A program made the position numbers and the translations under genes. This document shows, piece after piece, positions 37,122 to 47,375 of a stretch of 64,000 nucleotides of DNA. Source of the stretch: Perna viridis (lineage: Eukaryota); contig CM074518.1 of assembly GCA_037379345.1 (NCBI GenBank), positions 19,716,001-19,780,000 on the forward strand, read 5' to 3'. The notes below the pieces were generated by a model. It had not been told where the DNA came from, made no database searches, and saw only the letters and a list, made by a program, of their open reading frames with translations. Position 1 is the stretch's first letter, and every line of letters starts with the position of its first letter.

Positions 37122-40100
37122 AGATTAGGGTGAGTGTTAGGGTAAGGGTTAGGGTTAGAGTTAAGATTGTTGTTAGGTTAAGTGTTCGGGTGAAGGTTAG
37201 GGGTAAGGTTAAGGTTAGGGTTAGGGGTTAGAGTTATGGTTAAGGTTAGGGTTAGGGTTAGAATCTAGTTATATGTTTAATGTAAGGTTTAATGCGTAGG
37301 GTCAGGTTTGGAGTTAGGGTAAGGGTAAATGTTAGCGTTAGATTGAAGGTTTGGGTTTAGGTTTATGGATAATGGTTAAAGGTTAGTATTTAGTGTAAGG
37401 TGTAAGGTAAGGTTAAGGTATATATAAGGGTTAGGGTTAAGGGTTAGGATTAAGGTATAGGGTTCGGGTTAGGGTTTAGGTATATATTTATCGTTAGGTT
37501 TTCCGTTTAAGGTTAGAGTCAGGGTTGGGATGTGAGTTAAGGGTTGTGGTTTAGGGTTAGTGTTAGGGTTAGGGTTAGAATATAAGTATAGGTTTAATAT
37601 AGGGTGTGGTTTGGGGTTAGGGTAAGGGAAAATGTTTGCGTTATATTTAAGGTTTCTCTTTAGGTTTATTGATAATAATTAATGGTTAGTATTTAGAGTA
37701 AGGTGTAAGGTAAGGTTAAGGTAAAGATAAAGGTTTGGGTTAGGGTTAGGTTTACGGTTAGAGTTATGGTTATGGTTGGGGTTAGAGTTAGGGTTGGGGT
37801 TAGGGTTAGGGTTATGGTTAGGGTTAGGTTAAGTGTTAGGATGATGGTTAGGGGTAAAAGTTTGAATCTAGGTATAGGTTTAATGTAAGGTTTAGTGCGT
37901 AGGGTCAGGTTTGGGGTTACAGTAAGGGTAAATGTTAGCGTTAGAGTGAAGATTTGGGTTTAGGTTTATGGATAATTGTTAAAGGTTAGTATTTAGTATA
38001 AGGTGTAAGGTAAGGTTAAGGTAAAGACGAGGATTAGGGTAAAGGTAAGGGTTAGGGGTTAGGGTTACGGTTTGTGTGTATGGTTAATAATTAGATTTGA
38101 GGGTTGGGGTTTAGGCTTTAGGGTTAGGATTAAGGTTAGAGTTAGGGTAGGCTAAAGGGTAACGTTTCGGGTTGGGGGTTAGTGTTAGGTGGATTAGGGT
38201 TTGGGTAACGGTTAGGTGTAGGTGTCAAGGTTAGGGTTAGTGTAAAGGTTGTGGGTAGGGTCAAGATAAGGGTTTAGTGTACGGGTTTAGGGTTGAAGTT
38301 AGGGTTACGGCGGGATTAGAGTTAGGGTTACGGTTGACGTTAGGTTAAGGGTTGGCGGAAGGGTTACGGTTTGGGTTGGGTTTTGTGTAGGGTTAGGGTT
38401 AGGGTTATATTTAGGCTTAAATTTTAGTGTTAAGGTTACAATTAGGGTTTGGGTTAGGGTTAAGGTTGAGCGTTAGGGGTTAGGATTAGTGTTAAAAATT
38501 AGTAATTTGTGCAAGGGTAAAGTAAGGTTAAAGTGAAGGTTAAAATTAGGGTTAGGGTTATCGTTCGGGTTAAGGGTTAGGTGTATGGTTAGTTTAAATC
38601 TTAGTGTTGACATTACATAGCACCAACTTTAGAGTTAAGGTAAAAGTTTAGGGTGATGGTTATTGTTAGGGGTTAGGATTAGGGTAAGGGTAAGGGTTTG
38701 GGATTAGAGTTCGGGTTAGTGGTAGGGTCAGGATCAGGGTTAGGGTTAGGATTAGCCTTTAGGGTTGGGGTTTGGGTTAGGGTTAAGTGTTAGGGCAAAT
38801 GTTAGGGTTACGGTTAGGGATAGGGTTAAGGTTAGGGTTAGGGGATACAGTTAGTGTTAGGGTTAGTGTTAAGGTTAGGGATTTTGGTTAGGGTTGAGGG
38901 TTGTGTAGGGTTAGTTTAAATCTTAGTGTTCACATTCCATAGCACCAACTTAAGGGTTAAGGTAAAAGTTTAGGGTAAGGATTAGTGTTAGGGATTATTG
39001 TTAGTAATTAGAGTTTGGGTTTGGGTTTAGGGTGTAGCGTTAGGATTAAATTTGATTAGGGTTAGGATTGACTGAGTGTTATTGTAAGTGTTAGGGTTAG
39101 GGGTTAGGTTTAGGGTAAAGGTAAGGGTTAGAGGTTAGAGTTACGGTTTGGGTTTACGGTTATTAATTAGAGTTGTGGGTTGAGGTTTAAGCTTTAGCGT
39201 TAGGATTAAGGTTAGGGTTAGGGTTGACTTAAGGGTTTCGGTTTGTTTTGGAGTTTGTGTTAGGTGCGTTAAGGTTATGTTACGGTTAGGTGTAGGAGTT
39301 GTGGTTAGGGTTAGAGTAAGGATTGTGAGTAGGGTTAAGGTAAGTGTTTAGTATAAGGGTTTAGGTTTGGAGGTAGGGTTACGGAGGGGATTAGGGTTAG
39401 GGTTACGGTTGACGTTAGGTTTAGTGTTGGCTTAAGGGTTACGGTTTGGGTTAGGGTTTGTGTAGGGTTAGGACTAGGGTTAGGATTAGGGTTCGGCTTA
39501 GGGTTAGGGTTAGGGTTAGAGTTAAGGATTTTGCTTAGGATTCAGTGTTAGGTGTATGGTTAGTTTAAATCTTAATGTTGACATCCCGTAGCCCCAACTT
39601 TATGGTTAAGGTAAAAGTTTAGAGTAAGAGTTAGTGTAAGGGTTTGTGTTAGGGTAAGGTTTAGTGTTAGGGTAAGGGTTAGTGTTAGTGTAAGGGTTGA
39701 TGTTAGGGTTAGGGTAGAAGTTTTGGGTAAGGGTTTTGGTTTATTGTAAATAATTGGAGTTGAGGTTTGGGTTTTAGTGTTTATCCTTAGGGTTTAGGTT
39801 TGGTTAGGGTTAGGGTTAGGGTGAGGGTTAGTGTTAGGGTTAGGGTTAGGGTAAGGGTTTGGGTTAGTGTAAGGGTAAGTGTTAGGGCTAAGGTTAGGGG
39901 TAGGGGTTAGAGTTACGGTAAGTGTTAGGGTTAGGTTTAGAATCTAGGTTTAGTTTTAATGTAGAGTTTGGTTTGGGGTAAGGCTAAATATTAGCGTTAG
40001 AGTTNNNNNNNNNNNNNNNNNNNNNNNNNNNNNNNNNNNNNNNNNNNNNNNNNNNNNNNNNNNNNNNNNNNNNNNNNNNNNNNNNNNNNNNNNNNNNNNN

Positions 40101-46735: not shown

Positions 46736-47375
46736 ACATTCAGTATCACCAACTTTGTTCTTATTTGATGCAATTGTCTTTTTCATCTTCAATCTAGTTT
46801 TTTTGCACATCACAACTAATACGTTACGTCGGAGCTAGCTGAAACAACGTTAACACGGCACCTTTTAACACAATACCTTTTGTGTCGTTTTTGACCCTTA
46901 CAATGAGGCTTCTGGGACAAGGGATATATTGCTACAAGATTAAAGATATCCCCAATTAAGTTTTATGGTTGTTATCATGAACTCGTGGTTCGTGTTGGTG
47001 TATTCATTTGCACTATGAAAAAGCAATTTGTTACCCTCTCATACTTTTCCTCTTCTCTTTCGTCTACCCCGGACGTGATATTTTGTTGAAGAATTCAGCC
47101 GATGTTTCTATAAAAGCAGAGAATAATTACCATACCGGTATACCTGGCTCATTCTCCAACTGTTTAGTGAAAGTCCATATTGCTCAATTATTTTTTTTCT
47201 CTATAAGTGCTATTTTGGTTTATAATTTCATGTTTTTTGTTGTTGTGTGTGTCTGTTTGCTGTGTTCAATTCTTGGATTATATTCGCTTTACTTCCGTTC
47301 AGATCTAAGGTTTTTTACGTCACATAATTTTGTTTTATGATTTGTGTTTTTTTTTATAGTTTCATCATGATCCCG
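46736..47375 (+). mobile_element. PLE-derived cassette copy 1 embedded in the telomere-like array
   Basis: CATTCAGTATCACCAACTTT...CACAACTAATACGTTACG (SQLIRY), AGGCTTCTGGGACAAGG and TCTACCCCGGACGTGA; homologous to 30184-30700. Confidence 0.85.

What the first reader, a model, noticed from the sequence alone, without database searches (positions are those of the whole stretch)
38580..46760. A ~20-nt retroelement scar is built into the telomere-like repeat unit: candidate amplified chromosome-healing junction
Seen: the non-telomeric motif ACATT(A/C)CATAGCACCAACTT recurs at about 38610, 38932, 39581, 41932, 42591, 44804, 45304 and 46540. It is always preceded by (T)GTATGGTTAGTTTAAATCTTAGTGTT-like sequence and followed directly by T(T)AG(A/G)GTTAAGG-like repeats. 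At 46736, 48986 (-) and 50521 the same lead-in and motif instead continue into PLE RT coding sequence (F-x-I-T-N-F..SN..SQLIRY; compare FRIVNFPF at ~30197). So the motif is the first ~20 nt of the PLE cassette. Inference: a cassette copy broke about 20 nt in, G-rich repeats were added at a TT microhomology (AACT|TTAGGG) in the polarity telomerase would use, and that junction was then amplified as satellite.
Basis: partly seen in the sequence, partly recalled or inferred. Interest (0 to 1): 0.8.

Follow-up and report, generated by a model that had tools for sequence, protein, structure and literature searches.

The report
Retroelement deletion scar in telomere-like array
A 20-base piece of a dead Penelope-like retroelement really is embedded in a decayed, internal telomere-like repeat block, but it looks like the leftover of one ordinary deletion that was then copied locally nine times, not a telomerase-healed chromosome break.

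Summary
The motif occurs 9 times within 3 mismatches (0.02 expected), plus a weaker copy at 46540. It always has the same lead-in and the same downstream flank. At 46736, 48990(-) and 50520 the same junction runs into a decayed, 5'-truncated Naiad-type Penelope-like element (PLE) fragment, collinear with genome-wide PLE copies.

The healing interpretation is not supported:
- All short units come from one founding junction. There are nine paralogs: eight in the window and one 160 kb away.
- They lie only in two internal clusters at 19.6-19.77 Mb of a 49.5-Mb contig that has true telomeres at both ends. None lies at a contig end.
- The repeats after the junction are as decayed as the bulk array (76% against 78% identity to perfect TTAGGG; true telomeres 99.7%).
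- Those repeats belong to an array module that also exists without the motif. The full cassette's own 3' flank carries the same rare variant (GGTAAAAGT) at nearly the same distance.
- A sister cassette lost 58 bases at the same junction by microhomology deletion.

Most likely, one roughly 700-base internal deletion left a 21-base stub, which was then duplicated with the surrounding repeat. The evidence favours this but is not decisive. Contigs from three independent studies support the assembly here. Low interest.

The parts
37130..46735 (+). Degenerate TTAGGG-like array (G strand on +), a mosaic of duplicated blocks 76-92% alike; holds the eight short motif units
38610..38629 (+). Short motif unit (PLE stub), 0 mismatches
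38932..38951 (+). Short motif unit, 0 mismatches
39581..39600 (+). Short motif unit, 3 mismatches
41932..41951 (+). Short motif unit, 0 mismatches (higher-order-repeat partner of 38610)
42591..42610 (+). Short motif unit, 1 mismatch (partner of 39581)
44804..44823 (+). Short motif unit, 1 mismatch
45304..45323 (+). Short motif unit, 1 mismatch
46540..46559 (+). Diverged short motif unit, 196 nt upstream of cassette 1; shares over 100 nt of upstream context with lineage-a cassettes
46736..47380 (+). Cassette 1: decayed 5'-truncated PLE fragment (C-terminal ORF part plus 3' region) and a shortened non-PLE tail, then about 100 nt of G-rich array
47470..47500 (.). Head-to-head switch from G-rich to C-rich array; the same switch follows four cassettes in the second cluster
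48278..48990 (-). Cassette 2 (lineage b), full about 200-nt non-PLE tail, 9-nt deletion inside the motif
50520..51145 (+). Cassette 3 (lineage b) at the right edge of the block; its tail diverges early into unique DNA
40005..40185 (.). N run (not filled); begins at the same repeat phase as the other two
40718..40937 (.). N run (not filled)
43025..43153 (.). N run (not filled)

Best explanation
The region is an old, heavily decayed interstitial telomere-like repeat block that abuts a 5'-truncated fragment of a Naiad-type Penelope-like retroelement. The module [array, lead-in, PLE fragment, about 200 nt of non-PLE tail, array] was copied by direct and inverted segmental duplication into two clusters 160 kb apart. 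In one copy of cassette lineage a, a single deletion of about 700 bases removed everything from PLE base 22 to roughly the tail/array junction. The ends joined at 1-3 bases of T microhomology, leaving a 21-base stub. That stub unit was then duplicated with the surrounding array to nine copies. Shown: the homology, the single origin, the local distribution and the decay level. Inferred: the deletion itself and its right endpoint. No function is implied; it is a neutral structural relic.
For: The motif is collinear with the PLE and the cassettes match the PLE C-terminus. All nine short units share at least 60 nt upstream and at least 40 nt downstream, so they come from one junction. They are 85-93% identical to lineage-a cassette B2 over lead-in plus motif, against 69-80% to lineage-b cassettes, so they arose after the cassette lineages split. 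Two short units share over 100 nt of upstream context with lineage-a cassettes. The downstream flank GGTTAAGGTAAAAGTTTAGGGT is an array module found without the motif: an exact copy at cluster B 30260 and copies with 1-3 mismatches elsewhere. The rare 9-mer GGTA[AG]AAGT has about 14 independent motif-less copies in about 34 kb. It also sits 8-12 nt after the tail/array junction of cassettes B2 and B3, with a 1-mismatch form in cassettes 1 and 2; the chance of this is roughly 1-2%. Sister cassette B3 lost 58 nt, including the motif, between ATCT(T)AG repeats. Cassettes are also cut at other points. The post-junction repeats are 76% identical to perfect TTAGGG against 78% for the bulk array. The motif is absent from contig ends and from the rest of the 723-Mb genome.
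Against: A blunt 55-nt similarity test between the short-unit flank and the cassette 3' flank was not significant (p 0.1-0.99). The background does contain true paralogs of the module, which weakens that test. The match rests mainly on one rare 9-mer noticed after the fact. Beyond that 9-mer the two flanks diverge. No intermediate or orthologous state was available. The motif-less copy at cluster B 30260 could be a derivative rather than a precursor.
Confidence: 0.6

Rival explanations
1. Duplicative rather than deletional rearrangement. An unequal sister-chromatid exchange, a replication template switch or a short-tract repair synthesis copied only the lead-in plus the first 21 PLE bases into a neighbouring array unit, ending at T microhomology. 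No telomerase is involved.
For: Short unit 46540 and cassette 1 form a 196-nt tandem pair with homologous upstream parts. The array is a mosaic of tandem duplications. A motif-less unit with an identical flank exists and could be the recipient type.
Against: It does not by itself explain why the cassette's own 3' flank carries the same rare variant at the same distance. The duplication breakpoints could not be defined in this low-complexity sequence.
Confidence: 0.2
2. A break 20-21 bases into the cassette was extended by telomerase at TT microhomology. The new junction later became internal and was amplified.
For: The polarity fits, and the first hexamers after AACTT read as mutated TTAGGG units. 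The region shows many strand switches and cassettes cut at several points, as expected after breakage-fusion-bridge cycles, which classically end in healing.
Against: The junction is a single event, internal to a contig with true telomeres at both ends. The flank is as decayed as the bulk array in every copy. The flank is a module that exists without the motif and resembles the cassette's 3' flank. Healing loses distal DNA, yet cassettes lie just downstream, so extra fusion steps are needed. The polarity is shared by the whole array and so is uninformative.
Confidence: 0.1
3. Assembly artefact or chance resemblance: the motif copies are mis-joins in a repeat that is hard to assemble, or unrelated to the PLE.
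For: Three N runs lie inside the array. The stub alone matches the PLE at only 12 of 20 positions.
Against: Copies carry distinct substitutions. Contigs from three independent studies bridge the cassette 1 5' junction, and one contig carries unit 46540 and that junction together. Others span the 3' junction and the head-to-head switch. Cassette intermediates link stub and PLE (17 of 19 to B1, 10 of 10 to cassette 2). Shuffles give 0.02 hits.
Confidence: 0.03

Closest known systems
Long degenerate (heterochromatic-type) interstitial telomeric sequences, as reviewed in PMC6410037
   Same: A kilobase-scale internal block of decayed TTAGGG-like repeats with higher-order structure, strand switches and embedded foreign sequence. 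It is far from the true telomeres.
   Different: It is split into two clusters 160 kb apart, each with inverted copies of a PLE-fragment module. The chromosomal context (pericentromeric or not) is unknown.
5'-truncated insertions of Naiad-type Penelope-like elements (Craig et al. 2021, PMC8557442)
   Same: The fragment is the 3' part of the single ORF plus the 3' region and is strongly 5'-truncated. Genome-wide copies carry the DKA motif and a C-terminal RT with no C-terminal endonuclease.
   Different: Naiads are reported to prefer (TA)n targets, not telomeric repeats. Here the module also carries about 200 nt of non-PLE DNA and spread by segmental duplication, not by transposition.
De novo telomere addition, or telomerase-mediated repeat insertion at breaks (Nergadze et al. 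2007, PMC2246262)
   Same: Non-telomeric sequence is joined to G-strand repeats at short T-rich microhomology.
   Different: There are no clean repeats, no terminal position and no contiguous flanks on the two sides. It is a single event copied locally.
Telomere-attached endonuclease-deficient PLEs (Athena, Coprina; Gladyshev and Arkhipova 2007, cited in PMC8557442)
   Same: A PLE lies next to telomeric repeats.
   Different: Those attach by their 3' end to the G overhang. Here the truncated 5' end abuts the array in sense orientation on the G strand, and the family is the dispersed endonuclease-bearing type.

Membership tests
Penelope-like element, Naiad clade (fragment) | Protein-level homology of the cassette to the PLE ORF, collinear at DNA level | tested here: met
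   tblastn E 1e-4 to 1e-13 for the cassettes; DNA alignment through the FRIVNFPF codons
Penelope-like element, Naiad clade (fragment) | DKG motif changed to DKA; RT at the C-terminus with no C-terminal GIY-YIG domain | tested here: met
   A genome-wide copy in L031 reads VVPADKAQNNIV, has the RT motifs and stops about 100 residues after IVNFPF. Feature taken from PMC8557442. Seen in dispersed copies, not in the truncated cassette itself.
Penelope-like element, Naiad clade (fragment) | N-terminal GIY-YIG endonuclease with CxC linker | tested here: inconclusive
   Pfam gave only a weak RVT_1 hit on ORF pieces of three decayed copies. No intact 5' region was examined.
Chromosome-healing (de novo telomere addition) junction | Non-telomeric DNA followed by G-strand repeats 5' to 3' | tested here: met
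   but the whole array has this polarity
Chromosome-healing (de novo telomere addition) junction | Templated, clean repeats starting at the junction | tested here: not met
   76% identity to perfect repeats in all nine copies, against 78% for the bulk array and 99.7% for the true telomere. Later decay cannot be excluded.
Chromosome-healing (de novo telomere addition) junction | Terminal position, or enrichment at chromosome ends or at many loci | tested here: not met
   Found only at C8 19.59-19.60 and 19.754-19.763 Mb of a 49.5-Mb contig capped by telomeres
Interstitial telomeric sequence, long degenerate type | Internal kilobase-scale block of degenerate telomere-like repeats | tested here: met
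Interstitial telomeric sequence, long degenerate type | Pericentromeric or heterochromatic location | not testable with these tools
   No centromere or chromatin data
Telomere-attached EN-deficient PLE (Athena/Coprina) | Element 3' end joined to the G overhang through reverse-complement telomeric repeats | tested here: not met
   The truncated 5' end abuts the array, sense on the G strand. Dispersed copies end without telomeric repeats.

The most novel reading that the evidence does not exclude
The block records breakage-fusion-bridge-like cycles inside an internal telomere-like array. At least one break, 21 bases into the PLE fragment (and perhaps the tail/array junction too), was capped by telomerase before the end was re-internalised. 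This would preserve a fossil healing junction in an invertebrate genome.
Probability: 0.1. Interest if true: 0.5.

Novelty: new member of a known kind. Interest (0 to 1): 0.2.

Why it matters
It matters little beyond annotation. It shows how a foreign C-rich tag lets one trace duplications and deletions inside an otherwise featureless decayed telomere-like block. It also marks a rearrangement-prone internal site on this chromosome. It does not give evidence for telomerase healing or for a link between PLEs and telomere maintenance.

Tried and rejected
1. Simple similarity test of the 55 nt after the stub against the 70 nt after each full cassette. It was not significant, and I later understood that the background is full of true paralogs of the same module.
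2. Split-flank scan for an empty site among the 'L-unit' landmarks. The result was only z about 1.6, so this was rejected.
3. Idea that the two clusters are an inverted segmental duplication that includes the unique flanks. The flanks share only dispersed repeats.
4. Idea that the inter-cluster segment carries proper telomere-polarity ends. The polarity holds only for about 150 nt at one edge before a strand switch.
5. Pfam on decayed PLE ORF pieces gave only a weak RVT_1 hit.
6. The costly protein searches, structure tools and complex prediction were not used, because the family scans and local alignments settled the identity.
7. No PLE consensus was built and no N run was filled.

Full report
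Setting. The window is G000:C8:19716001-19780000, inside a 49.48-Mb contig of a 723-Mb, 46-contig assembly. Both ends of that contig carry 5-9 kb of near-perfect telomere repeats in the correct polarity: about 80 perfect hexamers per 500 nt and 99.7% identity to the perfect repeat. The block studied here is therefore internal.

From 37130 to 46735 the + strand is a G-rich, almost C-free, decayed TTAGGG-like array, with 10-30 perfect hexamers per 500 nt and mean 78% identity to the perfect repeat. It is followed by a non-repeat island (46736-47380, +), a head-to-head switch to C-rich array near 47480, a second island (48278-48990, -), another strand switch near 49610, and a third island from 50520 (+) that runs into unique DNA.

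Observation. The 20-nt motif has 9 hits at up to 3 mismatches, against 0.02 expected. A more diverged copy lies at 46540, and the 48990(-) copy has a 9-nt internal deletion. Every short copy has the same lead-in and the same downstream sequence for at least 40 nt.

The three islands translate, with stops and frameshifts, to the FSITNF..SQLIRY.. tail. That tail belongs to a very abundant dispersed element, which gave 5392 first-look candidates. Its better-preserved copies read ...KLYDKRDDFSFRIVNFPFICGNIPSAPAYGVFISQLIRYARAC.... One such copy shows PLE-type RT motifs, the ADKA form of the DKG motif, and an ORF that stops about 100 residues after IVNFPF. These are Naiad-clade features according to PMC8557442.

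At DNA level the cassettes align collinearly with ten dispersed copies. PLE homology starts at about CATTC, the F-R-I-V-N-F codons; upstream of that the sequence is telomere-like. tblastn of a PLE ORF piece hits the cassettes at E 1e-4 to 1e-13 and the comparison copy at 30174-30410 at E 2e-29. The stub alone matches the PLE at only 12 of 20 positions, but cassette intermediates link them (17 of 19 to cassette B1, 10 of 10 to cassette 2).

Distribution. Genome-wide, at up to 2 mismatches, the motif occurs only in the window and at C8 19.587 and 19.603 Mb. The remaining hits are at the level of the reversed-pattern control. That second cluster (19.585-19.608 Mb, fetched) is another decayed array with many strand switches. 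It holds six cassette copies or pieces (B1-B6) and one short unit. So there are nine short units in all, on one chromosome, and none at a contig end.

What the cassette is. PLE homology ends about 560-600 nt into the cassette. Dispersed copies end at a conserved 3' terminus that the cassette lacks. The last 200 nt or so of the cassette occur essentially only in these two clusters. The copied module is therefore PLE fragment plus non-PLE DNA, and it spread by segmental duplication rather than transposition.

The module is cut at different points in different copies. B1 continues into unique DNA. Cassette 3 diverges after about 110 nt of tail. Most copies join array after about 200 nt of tail. 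B6 keeps only the last 55 nt. B3 lacks the first 58 nt, a deletion between ATCT(T)AG direct repeats that removed the motif, and B5 starts at about the same point. The region is thus prone to breakage, rejoining and inversion.

Origin of the short units. They are monophyletic: they share upstream and downstream sequence. Over lead-in plus motif they are 85-93% identical to lineage-a cassette B2. They are only 69-80% identical to the lineage-b cassettes (cassettes 2 and 3, B1, B4), which carry a different lead-in variant. Units 46540 and the cluster-B unit share more than 100 nt of upstream context with lineage-a cassettes. So the short form arose within lineage a, after the cassettes had already been duplicated.

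Was the downstream flank newly synthesised?
- It is 76% identical to perfect repeats in all nine copies, the same as the bulk array.
- The 22-mer that starts 4 nt after AACTT recurs without any motif. There is an exact copy at cluster B 30260, inside a unit that aligns with a short unit over about 350 nt but lacks lead-in and motif. Copies with 1-3 mismatches form the left part of a module repeated throughout both clusters.
- The rare variant GGTA[AG]AAGT has about 14 independent motif-less array copies in about 34 kb. It also lies 8-12 nt after the tail/array junction of cassettes B2 and B3, with a one-mismatch form after cassettes 1 and 2. That is both cassette lineages, at nearly the same distance as after the stub. 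The chance of this is roughly 1-2%, although I noticed it after the fact.

A blunt 55-nt similarity test was not significant, and an attempt to derive both flanks from another landmark unit failed. The most economical reading is still one deletion from PLE base 22 to about the tail/array junction, joined at 1-3 T of microhomology (AACTTT is shared by both forms), followed by duplication with the array. A duplicative variant (unequal exchange or a repair template switch) is nearly as good.

Telomerase healing is not excluded, but it needs extra steps. Healing loses the distal DNA, yet cassettes lie 200 nt to 4 kb downstream. It also predicts features that are absent, and its one positive point, polarity, is shared by the entire array.

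Assembly check. Contigs from runs of three studies were laid on 44200-47600. One 656-nt contig carries unit 46540 and the cassette 1 5' junction together. Contigs from two other runs bridge that junction. Contigs from three runs span the cassette 3' junction and the head-to-head switch. Contigs start within a few bases of the motif at 44804 and 45304, as expected where the repeated lead-in breaks short-read contigs. Single-base differences between samples look like polymorphism.

N runs. All three begin right after the same landmark and end just before the same module, so they sit at one phase of the repeat. Continuity across them is unknown and I did not fill or infer them. No motif copy is nearer than about 405 nt. 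Periods that span them (for example 3322 nt between 38610 and 41932) rest on estimated gap lengths.

Comparison and verdict. This is a long, decayed interstitial telomeric block (type reviewed in PMC6410037) with a trapped Naiad-type PLE fragment and a deletion stub. It is not an Athena/Coprina-type telomere attachment: the orientation and the end that abuts the array are both wrong. It is not a Nergadze-type telomerase insertion either (PMC2246262). Earlier notes of this scan on the same window describe the three cassettes and the head-to-head junction, and I agree with them. Notes elsewhere in the genome call the abundant PLE a Naiad, which the DKA motif supports. Interest is low.

Noticed in passing
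window 40005-40185, 40718-40937, 43025-43153: All three N runs begin right after the same landmark (GGTAAGGCTAAATATT...) and end just before the same array module, so they sit at one phase of the higher-order repeat rather than at random places.
   Followed up: partly
window 47470-47500; L035 about 8420; L036 about 680; L037 about 5950: The same head-to-head G-to-C strand switch, about 100 nt after the cassette tail, is present in cassette 1 and in cluster-B cassettes B2, B3, B5 (and B6). It is part of the duplicated module, not an independent telomere fusion.
   Followed up: partly
window 48278-48300 (-) and equivalents; L035 about 4565 (B1): The cassette tail joins array (...GTTAAGTCAG then GGTTAGGG...) in G-strand polarity, while copy B1 continues into unique DNA at the same point. 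This is a second junction of non-telomeric DNA to array and a better formal candidate for an old array boundary than the 20-nt stub.
   Followed up: partly
L035 9760-9850 (cassette B3): A 58-nt deletion between ATCT(T)AG direct repeats removed the end of the lead-in and the first 58 nt of the cassette, in a copy otherwise near-identical to B2.
   Followed up: yes
L037 1200-1560 (cassette B4, -): The cassette tail is followed by a short C-rich stretch and then the reverse complement of part of the tail itself, a local fold-back duplication.
   Followed up: no
L043 (G000:C13:19696001-19705600): At least 9.5 kb of near-perfect CCCTAA repeats lie in the interior of a 36.6-Mb contig. This is either a scaffold join at a telomere or a young interstitial array.
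   Followed up: no
L042 (G000:C14:26575001-26584000): Another decayed, strand-switching telomere-like block on a different contig, weakly similar to landmarks of this one.
   Followed up: no
window 32599-32956 (-), 33193-33541 (-), 34630-34794 (-), 30174-30410 (+): Several further decayed fragments of the same PLE C-terminal region lie just left of the array.
   Followed up: partly
window 25251-25759 and 51443-51923; L035 2750-3260: About 500-nt dispersed repeat copies (88-89% alike) flank both clusters. They are the only homology between the unique flanks.
   Followed up: no
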